A DNA stretch of 64,000 nt from IMGVR_UViG_3300035703_000010:140652-204651, one strand, 5' to 3'. Counted from the first letter of the stretch, positions 8,548 to 21,888 are shown. Translations and numbers: made by a program. The notes: generated by a model from the sequence alone, not told the origin.

Positions 8548-9552
8548 ATGGCTAAAGGATTAGACGTCGGTACATCATTTATAGTTCTTGCTGAAGAAGG
8601 CGCAAAAGGAAAAGTTACATACAAAGATTTCCGCGATGCTTTTTATGTCATCAAACCTACAACTCCAATTGCAACAAAGATGATTGAAAAGGGATTAGCA
8701 GGAAAAACTTTCGTTAAGGATGCCGATGGTTCTTTCATCATCCTTGGAAAAGACGCAATTGAGAAGGCAGTCGAGAGAAACGATTCAGCTAAGAGACCGA
8801 TGTATAAAGGCGTAGTTTCTTCAAAAGAAAAAGATGCAAGAAGAATTTTGACTTATATCCTTAAAGAAGTATCAGGAACACCAGCAGAACCAGGAGAAAA
8901 ATTAGTCTTCTGCGTACCAGCTCAACCTGTCGATCAAGAAGATGAGGATTTTGACGTCGGATACCATGAAGACGTAATCGTAAAACTTCTTACAGAAGTT
9001 GGGTATTCAGCACGTGCAATAAATGAGGCCGAAGCTCTTTGTTATTCTGAACTAGAAAAGGATGATTATACTGGAGTGGCTCTATCATGGGGCGCGGGAA
9101 TGGTTAACGTTTGCGTAATGCTCAATGGTGAACCTGTCGTTACTTTCTCTACAACGAAGTCTGGTGACTGGGTTGATCGCATGGCTGCAGTGGCTACTGG
9201 AGAACCTGATTCTATCGTTCAGGCAGAAAAGGAAAATGGAGATTTTACCGTAGGTCAGCCGAATGACAATCAAGTTCTTGCTGCGGTTGCTTCTTATTAT
9301 GATCGTCTAATCGATTACACGACGAAGCAATTGGCATCATCCATGGAAGGACATAAGTCTATTCCAAAGTTCAAGGATCCGCTTCCAGTCGTCGTTGCTG
9401 GAGGAACCTCAAAAGCAAAAGGATTCGTCGATCTTTTTGCAAAGAAACTTAATGAGAATGGTTTTCCGCTTCCTGTCAAAGAAGTTCGTCATGCAGCTGA
9501 TCCACTTCATGCTGTTGCTCGCGGTTGCCTAATCGCTGCGCAAATTATGTAA
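8548..9552 (+). CDS. Actin-like ATPase (MreB/MamK/ParM superfamily)
   Basis: Phosphate-1 GLDVGT, connect-1 INEAEA, phosphate-2 SWGAG, adenosine VAGGTS, connect-2 AVARGCL; SD AGGAG. Confidence 0.88.
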   Translation: MAKGLDVGTSFIVLAEEGAKGKVTYKDFRDAFYVIKPTTPIATKMIEKGLAGKTFVKDADGSFIILGKDAIEKAVERNDSAKRPMYKGVVSSKEKDARRILTYILKEVSGTPAEPGEKLVFCVPAQPVDQEDEDFDVGYHEDVIVKLLTEVGYSARAINEAEALCYSELEKDDYTGVALSWGAGMVNVCVMLNGEPVVTFSTTKSGDWVDRMAAVATGEPDSIVQAEKENGDFTVGQPNDNQVLAAVASYYDRLIDYTTKQLASSMEGHKSIPKFKDPLPVVVAGGTSKAKGFVDLFAKKLNENGFPLPVKEVRHAADPLHAVARGCLIAAQIM

Positions 9553-9660: not shown

Positions 9661-12354
9661 ATGACTACAAAAGTTCCTTCACGATTCGTAGGCCTTCACA
9701 GCCACTCGGGGTTTAGTACCTTTGATGGACTTGATTATCCGCAAGAACACATCGATTACGTTCTAGAGAACGGTATGGATGCCTGGTCGTTGACTGACCA
9801 TGGTCACATGAACGGATTCTGCCATGCATATCTTCATGCCGAGAAGATGAAAAAATCAGGTAAGAACTTCAAGTTCATTCCTGGCTGCGAGATGTACGTC
9901 CATCCTGATCTAAAACAATGGCAGATCGATCTCGATAAGTCGAGAGAAAAACCGATCAAGGACGAATCTATCCTCACACCCCTCGCTGCGATCGTTGACG
10001 GTAACGATGAAACGACTGACATCGGTACCGATGAAGCCGCATTGACCATCGAAAACGAGGAGGAAACAAAATCAGGCAAGTACAACGACCCGATCAAACG
10101 TCGGCATCATCTCGTTGTCCTACCGAAAACATCAATTGGCCTACAAAGGTTATTCCATCTAGTTTCTCGAGGTTATTTGGAGGGCTTCTATAGGTTCCCA
10201 CGAGTTGATTATGCGATGTTGAAGGAAGCCGCAAAGGGAGGTCATCTCATGATTTCAACAGCATGCCTAGGTGGTGTGCTGAGCTATGACGTCTTCTCAA
10301 AGGTTCAACGCGTCAAGTTCGATGACCTATCACACAAACTTCTTGATGATAGGAGCTTGCTTGAGTCAACCTTGCTTGAGATGGGTAACACATATGACAA
10401 ATTGGTTAATGCTGTAGGACGAGACAATGTTTGCCTTGAGCTACAATTCAACAAACTTCCAGCCCAACATCTTGTTAACCGCGCAATTCTTGAATTTGCG
10501 AAGAAGAATTCATTGACTGATCGACTCGTTGTAACTTGCGATTCTCATTATTCTCGTCCAGACAACTGGAAAGAGCGTGAGATCTACAAGAAGCTAGGAT
10601 GGCTTAATTACCAAAACTTCGATCCGAACATGCTGCCGAAGTCGAAGGACGATCTGAAGTGCGAGTTGTATCCAAAGAACGCACCTCAGGTCTGGGATTC
10701 CTACCTGTCCACGTCTGAAGACATGTCATTCTATGATGATGATGTTGTTCGTGAAGCAATCGAGCGGACTCATGACATCGTCCACAATGAAATCGGCGAT
10801 ATCCATCCTGATAAGGAGATGAAGCTACCATCCTACGTCATCCCTGAAGGATTCACTGAAGATAAAGCATTGGTCGATGCATGTAAGAAAGGTCTCATTT
10901 GGCGAGGGCTCGATGACAAGCCTGAGTACATCGAACGTATCAAGTATGAGCTATCGATCATCAAAGGTAAGAAGTTCTCACGCTACTTCTTGACGATGAA
11001 GGCGATCATGGATTTGGCACGAGAACATATGTTGATCGGGCCAGGTCGCGGATCTGCTGCAGGTTCTCTCGTTGCTTATGTTCTTGGTGTTACTAACCTT
11101 GACCCTATTGAATACGACTTATCATTTGAACGCTTCCTTAACCCATCTCGACAAGGCGCTCCTGATATCGATTCTGACATTGGAGATCGCGATAAACTAA
11201 TCGAGCTCATGCGCGAAAACTTTGGTAATAACAATGTTATCCCAATTTCTAACTACAATACTTTTAAGTTAAAGAGCCTCATTAAAGACATCGCGCGGTT
11301 CTACAACATCCCATTTGAAGAAGTCAATGCAGCCTTAGCTCCCGTTGAAGATGACGTAAAGAAAGAGGTCTTTAAGCCAGGAGTTGATAAGAATCTTTTC
11401 GTCTTGACTTATGAAGATGCGATGAAGTATTCAAAGTCGATGCAAGACTTCGTCGCAGCGCATCCAGAGGTTGCAGAACCTATCGAGATCTTATTCAAAC
11501 AAAACCGATCTCTCGGCCGACATGCGGGTGGCGTCATCGTGTCGGAGAACGTTGCAGAGAGGATGCCTCTTATTCTTGCTCGTGGCGAACCTCAAACCCC
11601 ATGGGTCGAAGGTATGCACTATAAACACCTAGAAGAGTTCGGCTGGATCAAATTCGATCTACTAGGTCTTGAAACCCTGCGCATTATCGAACGAGCTATC
11701 TACCTGATTCTGCAACGTCGAGAAGGTGTAGCAAATCCAACATTTAAGGATGTGAAGGCTTGGTTCGACAAGCATATGGATCCTAAGAATATCGATCTCA
11801 ATGATCAAAGGGTGTATGAATACGTTTATCATGAGGGACGATTTGCTGGTGTGTTCCAGTGTACGCAACCTGGTGCTCAACGATTGTTCACTAAGGCAAA
11901 GCCTCGCAGCATCATCGACATTGCAACTTTGACATCGATCTATCGTCCTGGTCCTCTAGCGGCCAATGTCGATAAGATCTATATCGGCGCCAAGAACGAA
12001 CCTGATAAGATCGATTACCAGCACCCTTTGATCAAGAAGGTGCTTGAGTCTACATACGGATGTTTACATGGATCAACTGTTATTACAACTGATATTGGAG
12101 ATATTACGATTGAAAAAATCGTAGAAGATCAGTTAGTCGGAACAAAATTGCCATCTTTTAACGAAGAATCTTGCGAGATTGAACAAGACGAAATTGTTGC
12201 TGCAGTTTGCACTGGCGTTCAAGAGACTCTAACGATTGAACTTGAAGATGGAAAAACTATTCGTTTAACATCAGATCATAGAGTGTACACAACTAGAGGC
12301 TGGGTCGAGGCTGGAGATTTGACTGCAGAAGACGAAATTTTTGGAATTGAATAG
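9661..12354 (+). CDS. dnaE: DNA polymerase III alpha subunit, N-terminal fragment (800 aa) fused to a split intein N-part
   Basis: PHP domain LHSHS..STFDG, LTDHG; GPGRGSAAGSLVAY; catalytic PDIDSD; HAGG; KFDLLGL; extein ends at ..LESTYG. Confidence 0.97.
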   Translation: MTTKVPSRFVGLHSHSGFSTFDGLDYPQEHIDYVLENGMDAWSLTDHGHMNGFCHAYLHAEKMKKSGKNFKFIPGCEMYVHPDLKQWQIDLDKSREKPIKDESILTPLAAIVDGNDETTDIGTDEAALTIENEEETKSGKYNDPIKRRHHLVVLPKTSIGLQRLFHLVSRGYLEGFYRFPRVDYAMLKEAAKGGHLMISTACLGGVLSYDVFSKVQRVKFDDLSHKLLDDRSLLESTLLEMGNTYDKLVNAVGRDNVCLELQFNKLPAQHLVNRAILEFAKKNSLTDRLVVTCDSHYSRPDNWKEREIYKKLGWLNYQNFDPNMLPKSKDDLKCELYPKNAPQVWDSYLSTSEDMSFYDDDVVREAIERTHDIVHNEIGDIHPDKEMKLPSYVIPEGFTEDKALVDACKKGLIWRGLDDKPEYIERIKYELSIIKGKKFSRYFLTMKAIMDLAREHMLIGPGRGSAAGSLVAYVLGVTNLDPIEYDLSFERFLNPSRQGAPDIDSDIGDRDKLIELMRENFGNNNVIPISNYNTFKLKSLIKDIARFYNIPFEEVNAALAPVEDDVKKEVFKPGVDKNLFVLTYEDAMKYSKSMQDFVAAHPEVAEPIEILFKQNRSLGRHAGGVIVSENVAERMPLILARGEPQTPWVEGMHYKHLEEFGWIKFDLLGLETLRIIERAIYLILQRREGVANPTFKDVKAWFDKHMDPKNIDLNDQRVYEYVYHEGRFAGVFQCTQPGAQRLFTKAKPRSIIDIATLTSIYRPGPLAANVDKIYIGAKNEPDKIDYQHPLIKKVLESTYGCLHGSTVITTDIGDITIEKIVEDQLVGTKLPSFNEESCEIEQDEIVAAVCTGVQETLTIELEDGKTIRLTSDHRVYTTRGWVEAGDLTAEDEIFGIE
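12061..12351 (+). mobile_element. Split intein N-fragment (IntN, 97 aa)
   Basis: Begins CLHGST (block A, Cys1); block B TSDHRVYT.RGWVEAGDL; ends at a stop codon with no endonuclease domain. Confidence 0.93.
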
Positions 12355-12364
12355 ACATATGGGT

Positions 12365-12400
12365 ATATTTATCTTCCAAGAAAGAGGCTCTTGGAAGATG
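12365..12400 (+). promoter_or_regulatory. Putative late promoter (ATATTTA) plus start-codon-sequestering hairpin of the endonuclease gene
   Basis: ATATTTA 12365-12371; ATCTTCCAAGA (12371-12381) / TCTTGGAAGAT (12389-12399) perfect 11-bp stem covering the AT of ATG 12398. Confidence 0.75.
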
Positions 12401-13303
12401 AGAACTTGTGAATGTTGTGATAAAAAATTTGTTTATACAGGACCAAAAGGAAAAAATTATCCCGCAAAGACTTGCAGCGCAGAATGTTATAAGATATTAA
12501 GATCAAAAAAAATATCTCAATCAAACATCGATAGAAGGATACACGAAAAAGTAGAAAAGATTTGCGAAATTTGTGGTACGATAATCATAACAAATGATAC
12601 AGAGAACCAACGCATAACTTGCTCTAAGAAATGTCATTCTAAGAGATTATCGAAATTATACGCAGGAAGAAAAATAACTGAAGAGTGGCGACAAAATCAG
12701 AATAAGTCAAAGACTAAAGACAAAATTGTAAAGCATGGAGATTTTTCATGTGATAAATGTCAAAAACATTTTGATACCAACACTTCGCTTAGATCTCATA
12801 GATCATATTGTACTCCTGGAAATGAAGGTCATATTTGTTGCGAAATATGCAATAAGAGTTTTTCTACGCGAGGGTACAAGATCCATTTTAAGAGTCATGA
12901 TTTAATATGGAGATCGAAGACTACAAGTTCTCTTCAAAAATCTCTACTAACAAGAACGAAATGTCAGACTACCTCTAAATCAGAGTTAGAATTTTTTGAA
13001 AAATTAAAGTCTTTGTTGGGTGATGATGTTGTACACAAGTTTAAAATTGAAGGAATTACTCATGAATATGATTTTTTTGTTCCTTCAAAAAATGTTATCA
13101 TAGAGTTTGATGGTGATTATTGGCATGGCAATAAGAAGCTATACGAGTTATCTTCTAGAATGAAACGTCAATATCAGATTGATAAAGTGTGGAATGAAAA
13201 AGCAATAGCTGCTGGGTATAGAATAATAAGAGTTTGGGCATCAGAGTCAAAAGATTTTAAGTTGGAAAATTATGTTAACACCCTTGAAAATAAAGTCGAT
13301 TAA
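12398..13303 (+). CDS. Free-standing homing endonuclease: zinc fingers plus a Vsr/DUF559-like nuclease domain
   Basis: CxxC..TCS..C twice, CxxC..H..C and CxxC..H..H fingers, then SKSELEF..YDF..IIEFDGDYWH..G.RIIRVW; sits between the two intein halves; ATG 12398 preferred over 12341. Confidence 0.85.
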   Translation: MRTCECCDKKFVYTGPKGKNYPAKTCSAECYKILRSKKISQSNIDRRIHEKVEKICEICGTIIITNDTENQRITCSKKCHSKRLSKLYAGRKITEEWRQNQNKSKTKDKIVKHGDFSCDKCQKHFDTNTSLRSHRSYCTPGNEGHICCEICNKSFSTRGYKIHFKSHDLIWRSKTTSSLQKSLLTRTKCQTTSKSELEFFEKLKSLLGDDVVHKFKIEGITHEYDFFVPSKNVIIEFDGDYWHGNKKLYELSSRMKRQYQIDKVWNEKAIAAGYRIIRVWASESKDFKLENYVNTLENKVD

Positions 13304-13385
13304 ACGTGACGTACCTGCAAAAGTTTATGATATTCAAACCAAGAAAAATCATAACTTCATTGCAAATGGCTTCTTAGTTCATAAT
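13272..13385 (+). mobile_element. Split intein C-fragment (IntC, 38 aa)
   Basis: MLTPLKIKSIK..VYDIQT..NHNFIANGFLVHN followed by Cys+1 (TGC 13386-13388). Confidence 0.93.
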
Positions 13386-14555
13386 TGCATAATTTTTCAA
13401 GAGCAAACTATGAAGTTATGTTCTGTCGTTGCTGGGTTCCCGGAGGCTGAAACTGACACGATTCGTAGAAACATCATGAAGCGTTCTGCGTCTAAAAAGG
13501 ATGCAGCTGCTGCAGACGCGAAGAAGGCAAAAGAAGACTTCGTCGCCGGAGCGATGAAGAACGGTGTGCCTGAAAAGGTGGCTGATGAACTATACGAGAA
13601 GATTCTCTTCTTCTCTGGCTACGGCTTTAACGCTTCTCACGCAGTGTCTTACGCAATTGATTCATATTACTGTGCCTGGCTTCTCACCTACTTTGAGGAG
13701 GAATGGCTATGCGCTTACCTCGAGTCGATGTCAGGAAATGATGAAAAGCGTGCTAAGGCATTCTCTGAAGTCAAGGCATTAGGTTACAAGATCGTCAACA
13801 TCGACATCAACTATGCAACGAAGAGCTGGACGATCCTGGATGGTAAACGATTCATGCCTAGCTTCCTTTCATGTAAGGGTGTAGGGGAATCCGCAGTAGA
13901 AGAAATCATGGAAAATCGTCCGTATAAATCAGTGGAAGATATGTTATGGAATGAGGATGGGTCATGGAGGCATTCCAAGTTCAATAAACGTGCCTTGGAG
14001 GCCCTCATTGCAATTAAGGCATTTGATTCTCTTGATTGTATCGGTCATGATAGGACTTTCACCGGATACAAACACATGAGTGAGATCTTGATCAACAGAA
14101 ACGGCGATATCAAGAAACATACAAAGAAGAATCCGACTGCAGGAATCGAAGCATTCCGTGAAGCTTTGATCGATACGAAGAACATGGATGAATGGTCCAG
14201 ATCAGAATTGGTAGATAACAGCATAAAGTATCTCGGTTCATTCAACGCTGCGATGCTGATGCCAGAAGAGATCTTACAAAAGCTTGAGAGCAGAGGAGTC
14301 AAGTCTGTTGATGATTTATCTGAAAGCGACATCTATTGGTTTATCGTTTCTGATACAAAGCCTAAGAAAACGAAGACAGGAAAAAACTATTTGTTGTTAA
14401 CGATTACTGGGCTTGGAGGACAAAACCATAGGTTGTTCTGTTGGGGATGGAATGGCGAAACAGAAATTCCCAAGTACAGCGTTTGCCTTTCAGAAATCAC
14501 CGTAGATGGCTACGGTAATAAAACTTTCATGAGTAAGATTAAAGTCCTTGATTGA
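13272..14555 (+). CDS. dnaE: IntC fused to the DNA polymerase III alpha C-terminal fragment
   Basis: After the intein: CIIFQEQ, FSGYGFNASHAVSYA, helix-hairpin-helix KGVGESA, C-terminal OB-fold-like region. Confidence 0.95.
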   Translation: MLTPLKIKSIKRDVPAKVYDIQTKKNHNFIANGFLVHNCIIFQEQTMKLCSVVAGFPEAETDTIRRNIMKRSASKKDAAAADAKKAKEDFVAGAMKNGVPEKVADELYEKILFFSGYGFNASHAVSYAIDSYYCAWLLTYFEEEWLCAYLESMSGNDEKRAKAFSEVKALGYKIVNIDINYATKSWTILDGKRFMPSFLSCKGVGESAVEEIMENRPYKSVEDMLWNEDGSWRHSKFNKRALEALIAIKAFDSLDCIGHDRTFTGYKHMSEILINRNGDIKKHTKKNPTAGIEAFREALIDTKNMDEWSRSELVDNSIKYLGSFNAAMLMPEEILQKLESRGVKSVDDLSESDIYWFIVSDTKPKKTKTGKNYLLLTITGLGGQNHRLFCWGWNGETEIPKYSVCLSEITVDGYGNKTFMSKIKVLD

Positions 14556-14566
14556 AGAGGTATAAT

Positions 14567-15088
14567 ATGGGAATGGTTATTTTATTTGACGGGCCTGACA
14601 AGGTCGGTAAAACTGAAATGGTCAAAGAACTTTCTAAAAGGCTAAACGTTCCTTCGTTTAAGAATGAATCTGAATGGAAAGCTTTTTCTGATGATCCTGA
14701 TTATTTCGTTAACGCTTTAAGATACGGTGATCCATACTTTTATAATTTTCTAAAATCTACAGGGACATCAGTCATTCTAGATAGATCATATCCTTCAGAA
14801 TGGGTGTACTCTAAAGTTTACGGAAGAAAGACTGATCAAGAAGCGTTGAGGCATATCGACTCTTTGGCTGCATCGTTTGGAGTAAAGATTATTGTTCCAT
14901 ATCGTACTTCTTACGATGGATTGCATGATGATATGCATGACATAGATTCTGAACAAATGAAAAAGATTTCAGACGTTTATATCGAGTTTATTGAATGGAC
15001 GAAGTGTAATGTCCTACGTCTGTGTGTAGATTCAGAAGACCTTGATTGGGAAATGAAAACCATTCTAAAATTTATTGGGAAAAATTGA
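14567..15088 (+). CDS. Deoxynucleoside monophosphate (thymidylate-like) kinase
   Basis: P-loop FDGPDKVGKT and ILDRS..SEWVY. Confidence 0.85.
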   Translation: MGMVILFDGPDKVGKTEMVKELSKRLNVPSFKNESEWKAFSDDPDYFVNALRYGDPYFYNFLKSTGTSVILDRSYPSEWVYSKVYGRKTDQEALRHIDSLAASFGVKIIVPYRTSYDGLHDDMHDIDSEQMKKISDVYIEFIEWTKCNVLRLCVDSEDLDWEMKTILKFIGKN

Positions 15089-15092
15089 TATT

Positions 15093-16118
15093 ATGAAACT
15101 AGGAATCAGTTATTGGGGATTTTGTGAGCCATTTGAAGCATCTAAAGAGGCAAAGACTCCTGATGGTCATCGTTACGGTCGGCCTATCATGGTAGATGCC
15201 TTACTTAATCAAGGGCATGAAGTGTATGCGCTGCAGGAAAGAAGAGAATCTACTCCATATCCTGGAATCACATATGACATGGGATTTCCTGATATTGACG
15301 TTCTATTTGTAGAATGGCGTTGGAAGACATACAAGAATTCTGGACCAAACAAGTTTGAAAAAGATTTGGACAGACAGTTTGAACTATTGACTCATTATCA
15401 TGGAAAGATTCCTGTCGTTATTTGGGATTGTGATTATAAAGTCACACACTTAGATGAAATGATGTGGCCTGAAGCGATTATCGCAGATCCAGCTTTTGAG
15501 CCCAGGTATCTTACAAGAAAACGAGAAAGAATAATGTTCTGGACGGATTGGAAAAAGCTTCTTCCAGCTGTTTCTACATCATTTGAATATGGGTATGTAG
15601 GAAATAACTATGAGCGTCCTCAAGCTTTTGAAAAGTATTATTCTTTTCCGTCGTCGACTCTTCGCAATTATGGAATTCAAACGACAGTTCATGGAAATTG
15701 GTTGGAAGTTTCACCAGAAAGAGAATCTCCGAAAGTATTGATTTCTTCTCACCCTAGTATTTCATTTGCTCAAAGATTGAATTTCTATGAATCGATGAAG
15801 AGATTAAACTCATTTATTTGTACGACACATATTACAAAACCAGAATATGCTCAAAGAGGTTTTGCTTCTCCTAGATATGTTGAGAATATCGTTTCGAACG
15901 TGCCAGCTTTGGTTCCAAAAGAATTTTTGAAGTCGAATCTATTAGGGAAAGACTGGGCAGTTGAAGGTGGAGATTCTGTCATTGAAAAAGTCAAATTAAT
16001 TTTTTCAATGAATTTAGAAGAAAGAAATTCGTTAATTTTAGAACAGGAAAATAATTTAAAATCTAGCGGTGTATTTTCAGTAAGTAATGTTGTAGATTTT
16101 CTTGAGTCGGTTAAGTGA
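15093..16118 (+). CDS. GT-B glycosyltransferase, candidate DNA base glycosyltransferase
   Basis: MKLGISYWGF..TPDG, GFPDIDVLFVEWRW, YVGNNYER, SPRYVE; resembles, from memory, GTs neighbouring modified-base thymidylate synthase homologues; located between the kinase and an epimerase. Confidence 0.65.
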   Translation: MKLGISYWGFCEPFEASKEAKTPDGHRYGRPIMVDALLNQGHEVYALQERRESTPYPGITYDMGFPDIDVLFVEWRWKTYKNSGPNKFEKDLDRQFELLTHYHGKIPVVIWDCDYKVTHLDEMMWPEAIIADPAFEPRYLTRKRERIMFWTDWKKLLPAVSTSFEYGYVGNNYERPQAFEKYYSFPSSTLRNYGIQTTVHGNWLEVSPERESPKVLISSHPSISFAQRLNFYESMKRLNSFICTTHITKPEYAQRGFASPRYVENIVSNVPALVPKEFLKSNLLGKDWAVEGGDSVIEKVKLIFSMNLEERNSLILEQENNLKSSGVFSVSNVVDFLESVK

Positions 16119-16125
16119 GGAAAAA

Positions 16126-17121
16126 ATGAAAGTATTAATTACAGGTATTGCTGGTCTTCTTGGTGCAAACTTTTCTCGTTATTTGCTTGATAAAGGCTAT
16201 AAAGTAGTTGGAATCGATGATTTAAGCGGCGGGTATGAAGATTCAGTACCAAAGGATGCTACTTTTTATAAGCTTGACTTGACCGACCAAAAGAAGGTTG
16301 ACGAGATTTTTAACGCAGAAAAGCCTGATTACGTTTTTCATTTTGCAGCATATGCAGCTGAAGGTCTTAGTCCATTCATAAGAAATTACAATTACACAAA
16401 TAATGTATTAGCTTCAACCAATGTAATCAACGCTTGCGTAAATCATGATGTAAAGAAAATCATCTTTACGTCGTCAATGGCTGTTTATGGAGTAGGAAAT
16501 CCTCCATTTACCGAAGAGCAACTACCAACGCCTGAAGATCCATATGGTATTGCAAAATATGCAGTTGAAATGGATCTGAAGTTGGCTCATGAAATGTTTG
16601 GTCTTCGATACAGCATTGTTCGACCGCACAATGTAGTTGGAATCTACCAGAACATTTGGGATCGTTATCGCAACGTAATTGGAATTTGGATTCGAAAAGC
16701 AATGAATGGCGAACCACTTTCGATTTTTGGAGATGGTACACAAGTTCGAGCATTTTCAGACATTAAGTTTTATTTGGAACCATTTGAAAAATTAATGGAT
16801 TCTTACGATGGAGAAATCTTCAACATCGGTGCTGACAAACATTACACAATTAATGAAGCTGCAGACACAGTAATCGGCGTTGCAAAAGAGCTAGGAATTA
16901 ACGCAACTAAAGTTCATCTAGAAAAGAGGAATGAAGTTCATACAGCATATTGTGATCATACTAAGGCTCATAAGCTCTTGTCTTTTGAGGACAAAACAGA
17001 TTTGCGAGAAACCGTTATGAAGATGTTTAAGTGGGCCATGGAACAGCCAAATCGTCCTACAAAGAGCATGAACTATGAAATTGAAAAGAACATGTATTCT
17101 TTTTGGAAGAACACAAAATGA
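16126..17121 (+). CDS. NAD-dependent NDP-sugar epimerase/dehydratase (extended SDR) 1
   Basis: GIAGLLG, FTSSMAVYG, YGIAK, RPHNVVG; SD GAGGA. Confidence 0.93.
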   Translation: MKVLITGIAGLLGANFSRYLLDKGYKVVGIDDLSGGYEDSVPKDATFYKLDLTDQKKVDEIFNAEKPDYVFHFAAYAAEGLSPFIRNYNYTNNVLASTNVINACVNHDVKKIIFTSSMAVYGVGNPPFTEEQLPTPEDPYGIAKYAVEMDLKLAHEMFGLRYSIVRPHNVVGIYQNIWDRYRNVIGIWIRKAMNGEPLSIFGDGTQVRAFSDIKFYLEPFEKLMDSYDGEIFNIGADKHYTINEAADTVIGVAKELGINATKVHLEKRNEVHTAYCDHTKAHKLLSFEDKTDLRETVMKMFKWAMEQPNRPTKSMNYEIEKNMYSFWKNTK

Positions 17122-17897
17122 TCACGAATTTATCTTTTCCTGAAAATTTAAAAGATAGAGAGAAATTTATTTTTGATCAAGTTTTGTTAGGAAACTTTGA
17201 TGCTTCATGGGTTCCTTTAACCTATGATATTTCTGGTAAAAAAGTTATTTTGAACGTTATGTCAGACGCGCTAAAAGTTGGAGGAATTAGAGTAAACGTC
17301 TCTGCGTTCCTCCAACAACAGCTAGCAGATGTTTTTGATGCTTCTTTGTTAACTGCGTTAGTTGCAGATTTGATGTACGTTCACGCGTCGAATATCCTAA
17401 ATCCAGTTCCACAACCGATATCATCAACAGTGTCTTCTATGATATCTCATGATGATAAAGTGACTAAACAATTGAAGTCTTATAATGGCGGAATAGTTTC
17501 TACAGTGGGAAAACATTGGATTTTAGATAAAAAAATAGATCAGCAACCTAGTAAAGCTTGCAATTATGGATGGCATTTTACAGGATCTAATTTTCAAGGA
17601 ATTAATGGATTTCCTTCTACAACATTACAAAAAACGTTAGATGGTAAACCAATCAAAGTGATTCAGCCGAATGCTACTGCTCATGATGCAAAGCATTCTG
17701 ATTATTCACAAATTTGTCAATTGGTTTCTCAACAATGTTGGATTAATGGAGTAGAACATAGATTTTCTGATCTATTGCAAGATTCTTCATTGTGTAATTT
17801 GGTCAACCACAATGGTACATTAAAAAATACTAGACAACCTGGAGTTCAAAAGATTTCTGGCCAAGTTGTGTTATTTCCAACAACAATTTCACCTTGA
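17118..17897 (+). CDS. Conserved hypothetical protein (..YGWH..IQP..H..H.DYSQ family)
   Basis: SDALKVG..RV, NYGWH, IQP.ATAHD..HSDYSQ; function unknown. Confidence 0.5.
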   Translation: MITNLSFPENLKDREKFIFDQVLLGNFDASWVPLTYDISGKKVILNVMSDALKVGGIRVNVSAFLQQQLADVFDASLLTALVADLMYVHASNILNPVPQPISSTVSSMISHDDKVTKQLKSYNGGIVSTVGKHWILDKKIDQQPSKACNYGWHFTGSNFQGINGFPSTTLQKTLDGKPIKVIQPNATAHDAKHSDYSQICQLVSQQCWINGVEHRFSDLLQDSSLCNLVNHNGTLKNTRQPGVQKISGQVVLFPTTISP

Positions 17898-17904
17898 GGA
17901 TATT

Positions 17905-18102
17905 ATGCCAACTTATGAATATCAATGCGAATCTTGTTCATTTTTTATGGAAAAAGTTCAATCAATAAAGGATGATCCTCTATCTGATTGTCCTCATTGT
18001 AATAAAAACTGCTTAAAACGCTTGATTTCAGTAGGAGGAGGATTTACTTTAAAGGGTGGAGGTTGGTACAAGGATCTTTATTCTTCTACTCCTTCGAAGT
18101 AG
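17905..18102 (+). CDS. FmdB-family zinc ribbon protein
   Basis: MPTYEYQCESC..CPHC..LKRLIS..F.LKGGGWY; SD GAGG. Confidence 0.88.
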   Translation: MPTYEYQCESCSFFMEKVQSIKDDPLSDCPHCNKNCLKRLISVGGGFTLKGGGWYKDLYSSTPSK

Positions 18103-18805
18103 ATCCCAACTTTTTTACGATGTTTCTGCTTGTTCTAGCAGCAGGATGAGATGGTTTAATTAAATTATGTTCGTCTTCATCAATTTTTGACTCAAATTTA
18201 GGTTTGATTTCTCCTGTCTCACAATTCAATATTATGTTGTATCCACCTTTTCCAAGCTTTAAAGGCTCAGTTAATGTGGATAGATAATCATATCTTCCTG
18301 CATTTATCATTTCTTTGTCAAACCATTGTTCTAGAACGAAATTAGAAACGCTGACATTAGTACCATTGACATTAATTTCATATGAATTGCTTTCAACAGG
18401 ATCACATAATTCAACAGCTACAAATGTTTCGTCTCCTCTATGCGACCATAAATTGATATAAGGATTATAAAAAGTTTCAAGTATTTCATGAGAAAGAACT
18501 ACGGAGACGGATTTTGATCCAGATAATACCGTTCCTCCATTGTCTAAAACAGGATTAACAAAAACTCTACCCCAAACTTTTCCATCTGGGTCTTGTGTGT
18601 GGTATCCTAATGCGCTAGCATGATCTGAATCATCCATTATCACCATTGGAAATCCATCGTTGCCTTCTATTTTTATTTCCCATGGTAGTCTTCCTAAAAT
18701 AGGACATGCATGATCTCTAAGTTGAATTCTGCACGCCTCGACCATAAGTTCGACATCTTGAGGAGATATTCTGTTTGATTTGTTTATGACGTTGAAAGTT
18801 TTCAT
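18086..18805 (-). CDS. Putative zinc metallopeptidase-like protein
   Basis: ALGYH, LSHEILE, ELCDPVE, VSVSNFV. Confidence 0.55.
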   Translation of the reverse strand: MKTFNVINKSNRISPQDVELMVEACRIQLRDHACPILGRLPWEIKIEGNDGFPMVIMDDSDHASALGYHTQDPDGKVWGRVFVNPVLDNGGTVLSGSKSVSVVLSHEILETFYNPYINLWSHRGDETFVAVELCDPVESNSYEINVNGTNVSVSNFVLEQWFDKEMINAGRYDYLSTLTEPLKLGKGGYNIILNCETGEIKPKFESKIDEDEHNLIKPSHPAARTSRNIVKKLGSTSKE

Positions 18806-18863
18806 AGATATTCATAATTAACAATGAACTTTTAAAATAAAAAAGCGTAATATAGGAAATGTT

Positions 18864-19832
18864 ATGAAAACCAAGAAAGCACTATTAACAGGCGCAGCTG
18901 GATTTATTGGAAGCAACTTGGCAAAAGAACTTTTGTCTAAAGGCGTAGACTTAGATGTTGTTGATGATCTTTCAAGCGGTCATGTAGAGTTTTTACCTCA
19001 GCAGCTTCAAGAAACGTTAATAAAAGAGGATTTTTCATCACAAAATGTTTTAGATTTGATTAAAAACAAAAAATATGATGCTGTTTTTCACATTGCAGCA
19101 ATTCCTCGAGTCAGCTATTCTGTAGATTTTCCAGTACAAACAAATGACAATAACGTATCTAAGACCCTGTCATTAATTGATGCTTGTAGAGGTAATGTAG
19201 GAAGATTTGTTTTTGCTTCTTCATCATCAGTGTACGGCGATACGAATATTTTACCAACTCCTGTTACATGTGAAAAAAATCCTAAATCTCCATATGCATT
19301 ACAAAAATCTATCATAGAAGATTATTTGAAAATTTATTACAATTTGTATGGATTGGACTCTGCTTGCTTAAGGTTTTTTAACGTATTCGGTCCTCATCAG
19401 CTTGGAAATTCTCCGTATTCTACTGCTTTAGGGGCTTGGTTGACTGCAATCCATTCTGGAAATCAAATGCGATCTGATGGAGACGGATCACAATCCAGAG
19501 ATTTATGTTATGTTGATAACGTTGTTGACGTTTGTATAAGAGCAGCAGAGTCCCAACAAGAATTAAAAGCCGTTAAATTAAACGTAGCTTGCGGAGTAAG
19601 AACTACGAATAAAGAAATTCTTTCTTACCTTTTATCCAAATATCCAAATGCAAAATATTATGATGCACCATGGAGACCAGGTGACGTAATGCATACATTA
19701 GCTGATATTTCTATGACAAAGGAAGTTTTAGGTTATGAGCCTTTAGTCCTTCCTTGGGAAGGGATTGATAAAACCATTAAATGGTATGATGAAAATTGGG
19801 ATATGATTAAAACTCTAGGTCTTTCAAAATGA
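18864..19832 (+). CDS. NAD-dependent NDP-sugar epimerase/dehydratase (extended SDR) 2
   Basis: GAAGFIG, HIAAIPRV, ASSSSVYG, YALQK, RFFNVFG, RPGDV. Confidence 0.93.
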   Translation: MKTKKALLTGAAGFIGSNLAKELLSKGVDLDVVDDLSSGHVEFLPQQLQETLIKEDFSSQNVLDLIKNKKYDAVFHIAAIPRVSYSVDFPVQTNDNNVSKTLSLIDACRGNVGRFVFASSSSVYGDTNILPTPVTCEKNPKSPYALQKSIIEDYLKIYYNLYGLDSACLRFFNVFGPHQLGNSPYSTALGAWLTAIHSGNQMRSDGDGSQSRDLCYVDNVVDVCIRAAESQQELKAVKLNVACGVRTTNKEILSYLLSKYPNAKYYDAPWRPGDVMHTLADISMTKEVLGYEPLVLPWEGIDKTIKWYDENWDMIKTLGLSK

Positions 19833-20830
19833 AAGTTTACGAGAATTTCACTGAAGCTTACGTCGACATTGTCAAAGATGTCTATACAGAGCCTGAATTC
19901 ATTTCGTCTCCTCGCGGAATGAAGATCAAGGAGATCTTGGGATACCAATTCAAGATCCTTAATCCTCGAAACAGAATTCCTTATGTTCCTGGAAGAGAGC
20001 TGTCGATCCACTACATGATCGCAGAGCTTCTTTGGTATTTGAGCGGAAATGATTCAACGGATTGGATCTCGAACTATTCTGCTTTCTGGTCAAAGATCTC
20101 AGATGACGGCAAGACGGCCAACAGCGCTTATGGCGCTCGTATTTTCAAGCCTCATGATAGAATCGCAGCTAAGGTAAAACAGGACTGGACCCAATGGAAT
20201 TATGTCGTAAATGAACTAAAGTCCGACCCTGATTCTCGCCGTGCCGTTGTTCATATCAGGTCTCCGCAGGATTCCATTCTTGCTAGCCTTGATGTGCCGT
20301 GTACTTTATCTCTTCAATTCTTTTTGAGGAATGACAAGGTTCACATGGTAACATCCATGAGATCATCCGATGTTATCCTTGGTTTAGCTTATGATGTTCC
20401 AGCATTTACTATCTTCCAAGAACTTTTGGCTCTTCAACTTACTCTAGAGCTAGGTCGTCCTATTGGTCTTGGGACATACACTCATTTAAGCGCTTCTCTT
20501 CATTTGTACGAGAGGCATTTTAAAATGGCAGAAAAAATACTTGAGGAAGATAAGAAGCAGGATTATAGAAATGTTTTAGAGATGCCTCCTATGCCTTCTA
20601 TGCCTCCGCTTGATGATCTGATGGTAGCGGAACGTGAGATTAAAAAGTGTATGACGGTTCCTGTTCTTTCAAGGGCGATTAATAACATCAACTTGAAAAG
20701 TGATTATTGGAACGATTGGTGTAGAGTTTTAGCATCTCATAAAGCTATTAAACTAAACGATGAACAAGCTTGTAACGAATTACTTTCTAATACAAAATTT
20801 GAAGGATACAGGTATTTCATAAAATCATGA
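19829..20830 (+). CDS. Thymidylate synthase homologue predicted to act on dCMP (dCMP hydroxymethylase-like)
   Basis: AELLWYLSG, SRRAV, catalytic PC (Cys158), MRSSDVILGLAYD with Asp189 at the position of E. coli ThyA Asn177, H.YERH. Confidence 0.8.
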   Translation: MKVYENFTEAYVDIVKDVYTEPEFISSPRGMKIKEILGYQFKILNPRNRIPYVPGRELSIHYMIAELLWYLSGNDSTDWISNYSAFWSKISDDGKTANSAYGARIFKPHDRIAAKVKQDWTQWNYVVNELKSDPDSRRAVVHIRSPQDSILASLDVPCTLSLQFFLRNDKVHMVTSMRSSDVILGLAYDVPAFTIFQELLALQLTLELGRPIGLGTYTHLSASLHLYERHFKMAEKILEEDKKQDYRNVLEMPPMPSMPPLDDLMVAEREIKKCMTVPVLSRAINNINLKSDYWNDWCRVLASHKAIKLNDEQACNELLSNTKFEGYRYFIKS

Positions 20831-21405
20831 CTACGACATTTACTGTATTTTGTGGACCCATGTTTTCTGCTAAGACCACATCTTTGTTGTCTGTTTTAGA
20901 CAGGTTTAAATATCAAGGTAAGAAGATTGCAGTTTTTAAACCCATGCTAGATGATCGATACAGTGTAGATAACATATCAACTCATGGAGGATGGAAAATT
21001 CCTGCAACTTGCGTAAAATTAGGAACCGATATTCTTGAGCATCTTGCAAATATGGATGAAAATCCTAATGTAATTGCAGTAGATGAAGCTTTTATGATTC
21101 CTGGAGTTGCCGATGTTCTTATTTGGTTGTATCGAAGCGGTTATTCTATCGTTGTTTCCAGTTTAGACTTGTCAGCAACTGGAAAGTCATTTAATGAAAT
21201 CGAAAAAATGCTTCCTTGGGCAACTAAGGTCGAAAAACTAAGCGCAGTTTGTACAGTATGTAATAAAGATGCTTTTTACACATATAAAAAGCAAACAGGC
21301 GGAGATGAGATTGAAGTAGGAGGCGTTGAATTGTATGAGCCTAGATGTTCTAGATGCCATCCTATAATTCTAAATCAAGATAGAAATTATGCCATGAAGG
21401 ATTGA
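20827..21405 (+). CDS. tdk: Thymidine kinase
   Basis: GPMFSAKTT, VDEA, C-terminal CxxC..CxxC, IEVGG.E.YEPRC. Confidence 0.95.
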   Translation: MTTTFTVFCGPMFSAKTTSLLSVLDRFKYQGKKIAVFKPMLDDRYSVDNISTHGGWKIPATCVKLGTDILEHLANMDENPNVIAVDEAFMIPGVADVLIWLYRSGYSIVVSSLDLSATGKSFNEIEKMLPWATKVEKLSAVCTVCNKDAFYTYKKQTGGDEIEVGGVELYEPRCSRCHPIILNQDRNYAMKD

Positions 21406-21408
21406 TTT

Positions 21409-21888
21409 ATGTCAAATTCTTTAGAACGTAGTATTCAAAAATTGAGCGTTTTCATGAAAATGTGCAATGAATTGTCTACGCTGTCATATGATGACAAATA
21501 TAAAGTTGCTTCTATAATAATAACGAAGGATTATAGAGAAGTTTGTGCTATAGGATATAATGGAGGATACAAAGGCGGTCCTAATAAAAGATCATCTTTA
21601 GAACAAGGAAAATCAGGGTTTTTGCATGCTGAAGAGAATGCATTGTTCCATTTATGCAAACCTTATGAACTTAGAGGTGATCTTTTGATGCTATGCACTC
21701 ATAAACCATGTTCAATGTGCGCAAGAAGAATTGTCAATAGTGGGATTAAGAACATTATCTATTATTCTGATTATATTGATGCAGAAGCCGCTTCCGATGA
21801 TATTTTTAAGGTTACTGGAACTTCTTGTGTTAAATTTGATCAACTTTTGCAGAATCCAGCTATTATCCTGAATATTCTAGAGTCCTGA
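21409..21888 (+). CDS. dCMP deaminase
   Basis: IGYNG, HAEENA, PCSMC, IVNSGI. Confidence 0.93.
   Translation: MSNSLERSIQKLSVFMKMCNELSTLSYDDKYKVASIIITKDYREVCAIGYNGGYKGGPNKRSSLEQGKSGFLHAEENALFHLCKPYELRGDLLMLCTHKPCSMCARRIVNSGIKNIIYYSDYIDAEAASDDIFKVTGTSCVKFDQLLQNPAIILNILES

What the first reader, a model, noticed from the sequence alone, without database searches (positions are those of the whole stretch)
16126..19832. Two distinct NDP-sugar epimerases in the base-modification cluster suggest a non-glucose sugar
Seen: two intact extended SDRs (YGIAK and YALQK catalytic motifs) lie between the GT and the TS homologue. Established: T4 glucosylation uses host UDP-glucose and needs no sugar-remodelling enzyme. 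Inference: the donor is remodelled (for example to a galacto-configured, amino or pentose sugar), or a disaccharide is built.
Basis: partly seen in the sequence, partly recalled or inferred. Interest (0 to 1): 0.62.

Follow-up and report, generated by a model that had tools for sequence, protein, structure and literature searches.

The report
Two sugar epimerases beside phage DNA-modification genes
An uncultivated large aquatic phage carries two genuine sugar-nucleotide epimerase genes among its genes for making and glycosylating hydroxymethylcytosine DNA. Relatives keep the same epimerases without those DNA genes or inside ordinary glycan clusters, so a special DNA sugar is plausible but not shown.

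Summary
Two intact extended-SDR genes lie at 16126-17121 (SDR1, YGIAK) and 18864-19832 (SDR2, YALQK), each matching Pfam Epimerase at E about 1e-50. They sit between a GT-B glycosyltransferase (15093-16118, best fold match T4 beta-glucosyltransferase) and a ThyA homologue (19829-20830). That homologue carries the T4 gp42/MilA dCMP-hydroxymethylase signature, not the 5-hydroxycytosine one.

Both SDRs read as 4-epimerases. SDR1 is GalE-like; SDR2 resembles the WbpP/WbgU UDP-HexNAc epimerases.

A preprint shows phage DNA glycosyltransferases that need an adjacent epimerase. Against it:
- SDR2 orthologues stay in the same DnaE-to-TK slot in at least seven related loci that lack both hydroxymethylase and glycosyltransferase.
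- SDR1 orthologues (69-73% identical) lie inside glycan clusters of other phages, the counterpart of an 18-kb glycan cluster elsewhere in this genome.
- Three unrelated passenger genes separate the two SDRs.

The SDRs therefore look like the phage's general UDP-sugar supply. Whether the DNA glycosyltransferase draws on it, and which sugar results, remains open. This is a new member of a known kind.

The parts
14552..15088 (+). Tmk-like P-loop nucleotide kinase (178 aa), candidate 5hm-dCMP kinase
   Evidence: PHROG 761 'thymidylate kinase' E 1.6e-13. Weak dTMP-kinase and AAA_28 hits. 32% identical over 92 aa to RB69 gp45, the kinase of the RB69 cytosine-modification cluster. Travels with the GT in relatives, but a 48% relative also sits beside ThyX in loci without the module.
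15093..16118 (+). GT-B fold glycosyltransferase of an unnamed marine phage family ('ORF347'; start taken as Met7 of the 15075 ORF), candidate 5hmC-DNA glycosyltransferase
16126..17121 (+). SDR1: GalE-like extended SDR, predicted NDP-hexose 4-epimerase
   Evidence: PF01370 E 1.2e-50. Best NCBIfam model is GalE TIGR01179 at 145 bits, below the 262 cut-off. Best PDB sequence match is 4zrm, titled UDP-glucose 4-epimerase, at 8.6e-46. Keeps Ser124, Tyr149, Lys153 and Asn179, has no dehydratase Asp-Glu pair, and has Ala at the Tyr299 gatekeeper position. Forms its own clade. Orthologues lie mostly in glycan clusters.
17118..17897 (+). Passenger gene 'ORF264', function unknown, not part of the sugar chemistry
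17866..18102 (+). Zn_ribbon_8 small protein, always paired with ORF264
   Evidence: PF09723 E 3.3e-13; co-occurrence shown.
18086..18805 (-). Passenger gene 'ORF239' on the opposite strand, function unknown
   Evidence: No family hit. The protein atlas returns only hypothetical viral and bacterial clusters. Often accompanies ORF264 and the zinc ribbon elsewhere.
18864..19832 (+). SDR2: WbpP/WbgU/TviC-like extended SDR, predicted UDP-HexNAc (or UDP-hexose) 4-epimerase
   Evidence: PF01370 E 7.6e-50. Best NCBIfam models are TviC at 152.8 bits (cut-off 760) and GalE at 142.6. Best PDB matches are 6dnt 1.6e-55, WbgU 1e-47 and WbpP 7.5e-43. Has the 'FFNVFGPHQ' motif with Gln201 and Thr at the WbgU Ser306 gatekeeper position. 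Its stop overlaps the TS-homologue start by 4 nt.
19829..20830 (+). ThyA homologue with a C-terminal extension, predicted dCMP 5-hydroxymethylase
   Evidence: Best PDB match is MilA CMP 5-hydroxymethylase, E 4e-45 over the full length. Aligned with E. coli ThyA, T4 gp42 and RB69 gp48 it has Cys146, Asp143, Asp169 retained and Asp177. The published signature is in PMC13326640. The genome also encodes ThyX for dTMP.
20827..21888 (+). Thymidine kinase (20827-21405) and dCMP deaminase (21409-21888), conserved backbone genes downstream of the module
   Evidence: PF00265 E 1.7e-38 and PF00383 E 1.2e-16. Conserved in all related loci, with or without the module.

Best explanation
The window comes from a 204.6-kb fragment of an uncultivated jumbo phage. 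Between its DnaE polymerase and thymidine kinase sits a pre-replicative cytosine-hypermodification module.

Proposed pathway:
- A ThyA homologue makes 5-hydroxymethyl-dCMP (inferred from active-site residues).
- A Tmk-like kinase phosphorylates it (inferred).
- After replication, a T4-beta-GT-like GT-B enzyme puts a sugar on 5hmC in the DNA (inferred from fold and synteny).

The two SDRs are NAD-dependent nucleotide-sugar 4-epimerases. SDR1 is GalE-like. SDR2 is WbpP/WbgU-like and most plausibly interconverts UDP-GlcNAc/UDP-GalNAc or UDP-Glc/UDP-Gal.

They belong to the phage's own general UDP-sugar supply rather than to a dedicated DNA pathway. They convert host gluco-configured UDP-sugars into galacto-configured ones. 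That pool is most likely shared between the DNA glycosyltransferase next door and the phage's 18-kb glycan cluster. On this reading the DNA sugar is probably a galacto-configured hexose or HexNAc rather than glucose. SDR2 is the better candidate donor-maker, because it accompanies the glycosyltransferase in nearly every relative, whereas SDR1 does so only in the closest ones.
For: - Enzyme class: Pfam, NCBIfam and PDB matches, and catalytic and gatekeeper residues.
- Hydroxymethylase signature: with criteria from PMC13326640. ThyX is present, so the ThyA homologue is free for another role.
- GT fold.
- Tight packing of GT-SDR1 and SDR2-TS homologue.
- Synteny: the kinase/GT/TS homologue plus an SDR2-clade gene recur together in about 30 distinct loci at 40-80% identity, despite local rearrangements.
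- Records G010, G013, G014, G015 and G016 (120-190 kb) show the GT and an SDR but no PF00534, PF00535 or PF01041 gene.
- The kinase-GT-TS-homologue architecture matches RB69, DLP3 and RL38J1.
- Experimental precedent for epimerase-dependent phage 5hmC glycosyltransferases.
- Shared-pool part: the glycan cluster in this genome and SDR1 orthologues inside its counterparts elsewhere.
Against: - No direct evidence links either SDR to the DNA glycosyltransferase.
- SDR2 orthologues are retained in the same slot where the TS homologue and GT are absent, needing at least 2-3 independent changes on the SDR2 tree.
- SDR1 orthologues are mostly glycan-cluster genes.
- L182/L183 keep both SDRs with no GT in the slot.
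- Most ORF347 loci lack SDR1, yet ORF347 is well conserved (53% mean column identity). So SDR1 is unlikely to be required for its donor.
- Neither SDR reaches any NCBIfam equivalog cut-off, so substrates are guesses.
- All related virus records are incomplete (8-84%), so absences are weak evidence.
Confidence: 0.45

Rival explanations
1. The two epimerases serve only the phage's conventional glycan pathway: the 18-kb cluster of GT2/GT4 enzymes, nucleotidyltransferase, PseB-like dehydratase, aminotransferase, acetyltransferase and UDP-sugar dehydrogenase, plus the GT2-methyltransferase at 62044-63348. That pathway would glycosylate virion proteins or remodel the host envelope. The DNA glycosyltransferase takes an unmodified host donor such as UDP-Glc or UDP-GlcNAc, as T4 does. 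On this reading the position of the SDRs beside the DNA genes is genomic mosaicism at a hot spot.
For: - The glycan cluster in this genome has no 4-epimerase of its own.
- In L184, L186 and L188-L193 the SDR1 orthologue sits inside the counterpart of that cluster: GT2-GT2-SDR1-PDDEXK-UGDH-GT1-GT1.
- At least 574 viral stretches encode SDR1 relatives, mostly beside other sugar SDRs, GTs and methyltransferases.
- SDR2 is retained where the module is absent.
- Passenger genes interrupt the supposed operon.
- The DnaE-TK interval holds at least four alternative gene sets.
Against: - SDR2-clade genes lie next to the GT, kinase or TS homologue in nearly all module-bearing loci, even after rearrangement.
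- Several large records have the GT and an SDR but no detectable GT1, GT2 or DegT gene.
- There is published precedent for epimerase-dependent DNA glycosyltransferases.
Confidence: 0.35
2. SDR2 is a host-takeover enzyme, not a supplier for any phage glycosyltransferase. By epimerising UDP-GlcNAc (or UDP-Glc) it drains or rebalances host cell-wall and envelope precursors during infection. That would explain why it is a fixed backbone gene among nucleotide-metabolism genes, with or without the DNA module. SDR1 is the only true glycan or DNA sugar enzyme.
For: SDR2 is present in all variants of the DnaE-TK interval, including those with no GT. Its closest solved relatives include WbgU and WbpP, which I recall as UDP-HexNAc 4-epimerases.
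Against: This is pure inference. A reversible epimerase is a poor sink without a consumer, and no precedent was found in the papers searched.
Confidence: 0.08
3. One SDR is not a 4-epimerase but another extended-SDR activity, such as a decarboxylase making UDP-xylose or a 4-keto intermediate, or a 2-, 3- or 5-epimerase. With the genome's UDP-sugar dehydrogenase the pair would then act in series to give a pentose (UDP-GlcA to UDP-Xyl to UDP-Ara) for the DNA.
For: The genome encodes a UDP-Glc/GDP-Man dehydrogenase. SDR1 orthologues lie two genes from that dehydrogenase in other phages. Pentose-modified cytosines are known in phages (PMC13326640, PMC12838424). UDP-glucuronate decarboxylase structures appear among the SDR2 hits at E about 1e-19.
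Against: Both SDRs align best to 4-epimerases by 20-35 orders of magnitude. At the position of E. coli GalE Ser124 they read TSSMAVYG and ASSSSVYG. That lacks the Glu of the UXS 'TSE' motif as I recall it. Both keep Asn179 instead of the Thr I recall in UDP-GlcA 4-epimerases.
Confidence: 0.07

Closest known systems
Metavirome 'subclass II' 5hmC glycosylation pathways: a GT with an adjacent sugar epimerase (bioRxiv 10.1101/2023.12.21.572611)
   Same: A phage DNA glycosyltransferase sits directly beside an extended-SDR-type sugar epimerase. In that study the GT needs the epimerase to put Hex, HexNAc or HexA on 5hmC. The same study noted GT-B enzymes next to thymidylate-synthase homologues and epimerases in IMG/VR.
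   Different: In the tested pathways 5hmC was made post-replicatively by a methyltransferase plus a TET-like dioxygenase. Here a ThyA homologue and a kinase imply a pre-replicative route. There are two epimerases of different subfamilies, both also found outside DNA-modification contexts. Nothing has been tested experimentally for this lineage.
T4 dCMP hydroxymethylase (gp42) plus beta-glucosyltransferase
   Different: T4 uses host UDP-glucose and encodes no sugar-nucleotide enzyme. ORF347 shares only about 13% identity with BGT and does not match its Pfam family. The hydroxymethylase is MilA-like with a C-terminal extension of about 90 aa. The polymerase is DnaE type, so this is not a Straboviridae phage.
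RB69 / DLP3 / RL38J1 glycosyl-5-hydroxycytosine clusters (PMC13326640)
   Same: The same three-gene core: a Tmk-like kinase, a GT-B glycosyltransferase and a MilA-like ThyA homologue, with phage-encoded enzymes that make the special sugar donor (UDP-arabinose route; UDP-galactopyranose mutase). The kinase is homologous to RB69 gp45.
   Different: Those ThyA homologues carry Asn169 and make 5-hydroxy-dCMP with a flavin. The window's enzyme keeps Asp169, so 5-hydroxymethyl is predicted. The donor enzymes here are 4-epimerases, not an isomerase, kinase, uridylyltransferase or mutase.
WbpP / WbgU / TviC (for SDR2) and GalE-family epimerases such as PDB 4zrm (for SDR1)
   Same: Catalytic Ser/Thr-Tyr-Lys, Asn179 and the Rossmann motif are kept. 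SDR2 shares the 'FNVFG..Q' motif and a small gatekeeper residue. These are the best PDB sequence matches.
   Different: Both score far below the NCBIfam equivalog cut-offs. SDR2 has Pro where WbgU has Gly102 and Thr where it has Ser306. Substrates are unknown.

Membership tests
Extended SDR, NDP-sugar 4-epimerase (GalE-like) - SDR1 and SDR2 | N-terminal GxxGxxG Rossmann motif and a full-length match to PF01370 | tested here: met
   PF01370 E 1.2e-50 (SDR1, 1-240/240) and 7.6e-50 (SDR2, 1-236/240). The translations show GIAGLLG and GAAGFIG.
Extended SDR, NDP-sugar 4-epimerase (GalE-like) - SDR1 and SDR2 | Catalytic Ser/Thr124, Tyr149, Lys153 and Asn179 (E. coli GalE numbering) | tested here: met
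   In the alignment with E. coli GalE (A3), Tyr149, Lys153 and Asn179 are invariant, and position 124 is Ser in both window SDRs.
Extended SDR, NDP-sugar 4-epimerase (GalE-like) - SDR1 and SDR2 | Absence of the Asp/Glu acid-base pair of 4,6-dehydratases after the catalytic Ser/Thr | tested here: met
   The sequences read TSSMAVYG (SDR1) and ASSSSVYG (SDR2). The dehydratase 'TDE' motif is recalled from knowledge of RmlB/Gmd and was not aligned here.
Extended SDR, NDP-sugar 4-epimerase (GalE-like) - SDR1 and SDR2 | Score above the curated NCBIfam GalE equivalog cut-off (TIGR01179, 262.3 bits) | tested here: not met
   SDR1 scores 145.2 bits and SDR2 142.6 bits. They are related to GalE but not equivalogs of it.
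Extended SDR, NDP-sugar 4-epimerase (GalE-like) - SDR1 and SDR2 | Measured C4 epimerisation of a nucleotide sugar | not testable with these tools
   Needs an enzyme assay.
UDP-HexNAc 4-epimerases (WbpP/WbgU/TviC) - SDR2 | Closest sequence relatives are WbpP/WbgU-type enzymes (which I recall as UDP-HexNAc 4-epimerases); small gatekeeper at WbgU Ser306; Gln201 | tested here: met
   6dnt 1.6e-55, WbgU 1.1e-47, 6wjb 7e-45, WbpP 7.5e-43. The pairwise alignment shows Thr at the Ser306 position and Gln201 conserved.
UDP-HexNAc 4-epimerases (WbpP/WbgU/TviC) - SDR2 | Gly102 and Ala209 of the substrate 'box'; TviC equivalog cut-off of 760 bits | tested here: not met
   Pro at the Gly102 position and Ser-Thr-Ala where WbgU has Ala-Ala-Val. 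TviC score is 152.8 bits. The residue roles are recalled from the WbpP/WbgU literature, not tested.
dCMP/CMP 5-hydroxymethylase branch of the thymidylate synthase family (T4 gp42, MilA) - 19829-20830 | Catalytic Cys146; Asp in place of Asn177 (cytosine substrate); Asp/Glu in place of Leu143 (hydroxymethyl product) | tested here: met
   Alignment A4 with E. coli ThyA, T4 gp42 and RB69 gp48 shows 'LDVPCT' and 'GLAYDV'. Criteria are from PMC13326640. MilA E 4e-45.
5-hydroxy-dCMP synthase branch (RB69 gp48, DLP3 gp80) | Asn in place of Asp169 (E. coli ThyA numbering), the published diagnostic residue | tested here: not met
   The window enzyme and all ten aligned marine relatives keep Asp169 ('MRSSD'), whereas RB69 gp48 has Asn ('MRSQN'). 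Criterion.
Phage DNA glycosyltransferases of GT-B fold (T4 BGT / AGT) - 15093-16118 | Two-Rossmann-domain GT-B fold superposing on T4 BGT over most of its length | tested here: met
   [not shown]
Phage DNA glycosyltransferases of GT-B fold (T4 BGT / AGT) - 15093-16118 | Sequence membership of the T4 BGT family | tested here: not met
   No Pfam hit at E <= 0.01. hhalign of the family profile against T4 BGT gives probability 10%, E 0.003, over the C-terminal 78 residues only.
Phage DNA glycosyltransferases of GT-B fold (T4 BGT / AGT) - 15093-16118 | Transfer of a sugar to 5hmC in DNA | not testable with these tools
   Inferred only from synteny with the hydroxymethylase and kinase.
GT plus partner-epimerase DNA hypermodification pathways (subclass II of 10.1101/2023.12.21.572611) | GT and sugar epimerase genes adjacent within a base-modification cluster | tested here: met
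   GT stop at 16118, SDR1 start at 16126. Conserved in L001-L011 and L040.
GT plus partner-epimerase DNA hypermodification pathways (subclass II of 10.1101/2023.12.21.572611) | The epimerase is tied to the GT: it co-occurs with it and is functionally required | tested here: inconclusive
   Every GT locus with enough flank has an SDR nearby. But SDR2 persists without GT or TS homologue in at least 7 loci, and SDR1 orthologues sit in glycan clusters. Functional dependence is not testable here.

The most novel reading that the evidence does not exclude
A widespread lineage of uncultivated aquatic jumbo phages replaces cytosine with 5hmC carrying a galacto-configured sugar (for example GalNAc or galactose). 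A previously unnamed, T4-beta-GT-like glycosyltransferase family would install it from a donor made by the phage's own WbpP-like epimerase. This would be a DNA base not yet described. It would sit in a DnaE-TK hot spot where the decorating enzyme is swapped between lineages (ORF347, a 428-aa protein, an O-carbamoyltransferase set, or nothing).
Probability: 0.3. Interest if true: 0.6.

Novelty: new member of a known kind. Interest (0 to 1): 0.4.

Why it matters
If the DNA glycosyltransferase really uses an epimerase-made donor, these abundant aquatic phages would carry a cytosine sugar adduct other than glucose. That bears on three things:
- which restriction, CRISPR and type IV systems they evade;
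- how well their DNA is recovered by sequencing libraries;
- new enzymes for labelling 5hmC.

The comparative result is useful in its own right. It shows that an epimerase lying inside a base-modification cluster is not enough to infer a modified donor, because the same genes are shared with, or borrowed from, conventional phage glycan clusters.

Tried and rejected
- **DNA search of phage genomes.** A blastn of the region against 50,697 phage genomes gave only one short unannotated hit. A tblastn of ORF347 gave none. No cultured relative was found.
- **5-hydroxycytosine pathway.** I first suspected one because of the RB69-like kinase-GT-TS architecture. I rejected it because Asp169 is retained.
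- **Genome-wide absence of GT and TS homologue in module-less relatives.** This cannot be settled. Those records are 8-17% complete and L035 is not held.
- **Promoter and terminator scan.** Fewer sites than in shuffled sequence, so uninformative.
- **MazG-type dCTPase.** Not found.

Full report
**Setting.** The window is bases 140652-204651 of a 204,651-bp IMG/VR virus record that CheckV rates about 60% complete. Its GC content is about 36%. The genes around the finding are those of a large tailed phage with its own replication and nucleotide metabolism:
- a DnaE-type polymerase split by an intein and an HNH/Vsr-like endonuclease ORF (9661-14555);
- IMP dehydrogenase/GMP reductase and a 'volactin' actin homologue;
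- thymidine kinase, dCMP deaminase and an Fe/Mn superoxide dismutase;
- ThyX just upstream of the window.

**The observation.**
- SDR1 (16126-17121) and SDR2 (18864-19832) each match the Pfam Epimerase family over its whole length at E about 1e-50.
- They carry the YGIAK and YALQK motifs and a GxxGxxG Rossmann motif.
- They are only about 34% identical to each other.

- It has no Pfam, NCBIfam or PHROG match and no relative in 50,697 phage genomes.
- It has 220 metagenomic homologues.
- A confident AlphaFold model (pLDDT 93.6) is a GT-B glycosyltransferase.

**The TS homologue** (19829-20830) matches MilA, a CMP 5-hydroxymethylase, over its full length at E 4e-45. A 2026 paper (PMC13326640) showed that MilA-like ThyA homologues in kinase-GT-TS clusters of RB69, DLP3 and RL38J1 make 5-hydroxy-dCMP, and that Asn at ThyA position 169 is diagnostic. 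So I aligned the window protein with E. coli ThyA, T4 gp42 and RB69 gp48.
- It has Cys146, Asp143 and Asp177.
- It keeps Asp169, like T4 gp42 and unlike RB69 gp48. So do all ten aligned relatives.
- By the published criteria it is a dCMP hydroxymethylase, and the base is predicted to be 5hmC.

The 178-aa kinase upstream of the GT is Tmk-like and homologous to RB69 gp45. The core module therefore has a known architecture.

**What the SDRs are.** Aligned to E. coli GalE, both keep Ser124, Tyr149, Lys153 and Asn179. Both lack the acidic pair of 4,6-dehydratases.
- SDR1: its best solved relative is PDB 4zrm, titled UDP-glucose 4-epimerase (8.6e-46). Its best curated model is GalE, at 145 bits against a 262-bit cut-off. 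It has Ala at the Tyr299 gatekeeper position.
- SDR2: its best relatives are 6dnt, WbgU, 6wjb and WbpP, at 1e-55 to 1e-43. I recall these as UDP-HexNAc 4-epimerases. It has Gln201 and Thr at the Ser306 position, but Pro at the Gly102 position.

Both are therefore best read as 4-epimerases able to take bulky (N-acetylated) substrates. Neither reaches an equivalog threshold, and the substrate cannot be fixed from sequence.

**Comparative genomics of the module.** Using the ORF347 family as a probe I fetched 34 IMG/VR loci and mapped the window's genes onto them.
- The block DnaE - kinase - GT - (SDR) - TS homologue - TK - dCMP deaminase - SOD recurs at 40-80% protein identity, with local rearrangements.
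- An SDR2-clade gene lies next to the TS homologue, kinase or GT in nearly all loci with enough flank.
- SDR1 follows the GT only in the window's nearest relatives (L001-L011, L040). A distant SDR1-like gene precedes the GT in L017 and L018.
- A tree of the SDRs gives three well-supported clades: SDR1, SDR2 and a third type upstream of DnaE.

**Evidence that cuts the other way.**

*1. The passenger genes.* The three genes between the SDRs (ORF264, a zinc ribbon and ORF239) form an autonomous cassette. It is found in about 40 viral contigs with no SDR, DnaE or TS homologue nearby. They are passengers, not pathway members.

*2. SDR2 without the module.* Following that cassette led to L035, L065 and L067. 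There the interval reads DnaE - ORF264 - Zn - (ORF239) - SDR2 - TK, with ThyX, a DNA N6/N4-methyltransferase and a kinase relative upstream, and no TS homologue or GT. A search starting from SDR2 itself added L095, L096, L097 and L099 with DnaE - SDR2 - TK. On the SDR2 tree these module-less loci are nested among module-bearing ones. They need at least 2-3 changes, while the deeper branches all carry the module. So SDR2 was kept when the module was lost.

Apart from the window's own clade, the 62-73% identical orthologues lie among other sugar SDRs, glycosyltransferases and methyltransferases. In L184, L186 and L188-L193 the SDR1 orthologue lies in the order GT2 - GT2 - SDR1 - PD-(D/E)XK - UDP-sugar dehydrogenase - GT1 - GT1.

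*4. This genome's own glycan cluster.* That arrangement is the counterpart of an 18-kb cluster in this phage's own genome at G000 29-47 kb, outside the window; the shared genes are 38-57% identical. It contains:
- a nucleotidyltransferase;
- three GT2 and four GT1/GT4 enzymes;
- a PseB/PglF-like dehydratase, a DegT aminotransferase and a GNAT acetyltransferase;
- a UDP-Glc/GDP-Man dehydrogenase.

That cluster has no 4-epimerase of its own, so SDR1 and SDR2 have an obvious alternative consumer.

*5. A swap hot spot.* The DnaE-TK interval exchanges its contents between lineages.
- ORF347 is replaced by an unrelated 428-aa protein in L040, L046 and L100.
- In L182/L183 it is replaced by a kinase, an ORF whose C-terminal part matches PDB 1xpj, and a TobZ/NovN-type O-carbamoyltransferase. 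SDR1, SDR2 and the TS homologue stay in place.

**Evidence that still favours a link.**
- The gene packing described above.
- The near-universal company of an SDR with the GT.
- Five sizeable records (G010, G013-G016; 120-190 kb; 35-67% complete) show the GT and an SDR but no PF00534, PF00535 or PF01041 gene.
- In metavirome-derived clusters, 5hmC glycosyltransferases with a neighbouring epimerase depend on it, giving Hex, HexNAc or HexA adducts (10.1101/2023.12.21.572611). The same study reports ThyS-associated GT-B enzymes with epimerases in IMG/VR.

**Conclusion.** The two genes are real 4-epimerase-like SDRs lying in a genuine 5hmC-type hypermodification module. They are not dedicated to it. 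They behave as the phage's general UDP-sugar supply: SDR2 as a backbone gene, and SDR1 as a gene that moves between the glycan cluster and the GT's side.

| Reading | Estimate |
|---|---|
| At least one SDR (more likely SDR2) feeds the DNA GT, so the adduct is galacto-configured rather than glucose | about 0.45 |
| The SDRs serve only the glycan pathway and the DNA GT uses a host donor | about 0.35 |
| Host-takeover role for SDR2 | about 0.08 |
| One SDR has a non-epimerase chemistry (pentose route) | about 0.07 |
| None of these | remainder |

The kind of system is already known, so novelty is modest. The unnamed, T4-BGT-like GT family and the swap hot spot are the more interesting leads.

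**Limits.** All relatives are metagenomic fragments, so absences are weak evidence. The residue-role statements for WbpP/WbgU, UXS and the UDP-GlcA epimerases come from my knowledge of those families, not from tests here. The trees are quick searches with SH-aLRT support only.

Noticed in passing
G000:C1:29191-47175 (outside the window; locus L088): An 18-kb minus-strand glycan-biosynthesis cluster in the same phage genome. It holds an NTP-sugar transferase, three GT2 and four GT1/GT4 glycosyltransferases, a PseB/PglF-like SDR, a DegT aminotransferase, a GNAT, a UDP-Glc/GDP-Man dehydrogenase and a PD-(D/E)XK nuclease. Its target (virion proteins or host envelope) is unknown.
   Followed up: partly
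window 9661-14555: The DnaE polymerase is in three frames. The N-part ends in the first half of an intein splicing domain. A 320-aa HNH/Vsr-like endonuclease ORF follows (12341-13303). The C-part begins with the last intein block. Relatives such as L008, L035 and L182 have an uninterrupted DnaE of 1167-1206 aa. This is either a split intein with a free-standing homing endonuclease or frameshifts in the assembly.
   Followed up: no
[not shown]
   Followed up: partly
L040:7683-8969, L046:12928-14232, L100 about 7675: A 428-434-aa protein with no Pfam, PHROG or PDB sequence match takes the place of the ORF347 glycosyltransferase next to the kinase and hydroxymethylase. The copies are 73% identical to each other. 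It may be an alternative DNA-modifying enzyme.
   Followed up: partly
L182:5817-9990 (also L183): In this variant of the module the GT slot holds four genes: a Tmk-like kinase; a 424-aa ORF whose C-terminal part matches PDB 1xpj (the structure that was the top hit for RB69 gp51); a TobZ/NovN/GdmN-type O-carbamoyltransferase (E 4.5e-20); and a 217-aa ORF. SDR1-SDR2-hydroxymethylase follow. This suggests a carbamoylated rather than, or as well as, a glycosylated base.
   Followed up: partly
L035, L065/L092, L067, L095-L099: Relatives without the hydroxymethylase and GT carry ThyX and a kinase relative; the upstream stretch of L065 (L092) also carries an N6/N4 DNA methyltransferase. A nucleoside-deoxyribosyltransferase-like gene lies upstream of DnaE in L035. 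This may be a different DNA-modification strategy in the same lineage.
   Followed up: no
window 8548-9552: A full-length match to 'volactin' (PF25216, E 1e-66), which I recall as an actin-family protein described from haloarchaea. It is conserved at 92-97% identity among the closest phage relatives, far higher than the neighbouring genes.
   Followed up: no
Homologues are present in related records G006 and G009.
   Followed up: partly
window about 107-280 and G000:C1:138968-139510: A dUTPase_2-family NTP pyrophosphatase (I recall T4 dCTPase belonging to this family) lies at the window's start, with ThyX just upstream of the window. The phage therefore has a separate true thymidylate synthase and a candidate dCTP/dUTP-clearing enzyme.
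   Followed up: partly
L198:3671-16050: A distant SDR1 orthologue (64% identical) lies in a cluster with two other SDRs, three methyltransferases and GT17-, GT61- and RXYLT1-like glycosyltransferases, with a 6-phosphogluconate dehydrogenase gene upstream. Phages with 200-284-kb contigs thus carry eukaryote-like GT families.
   Followed up: no
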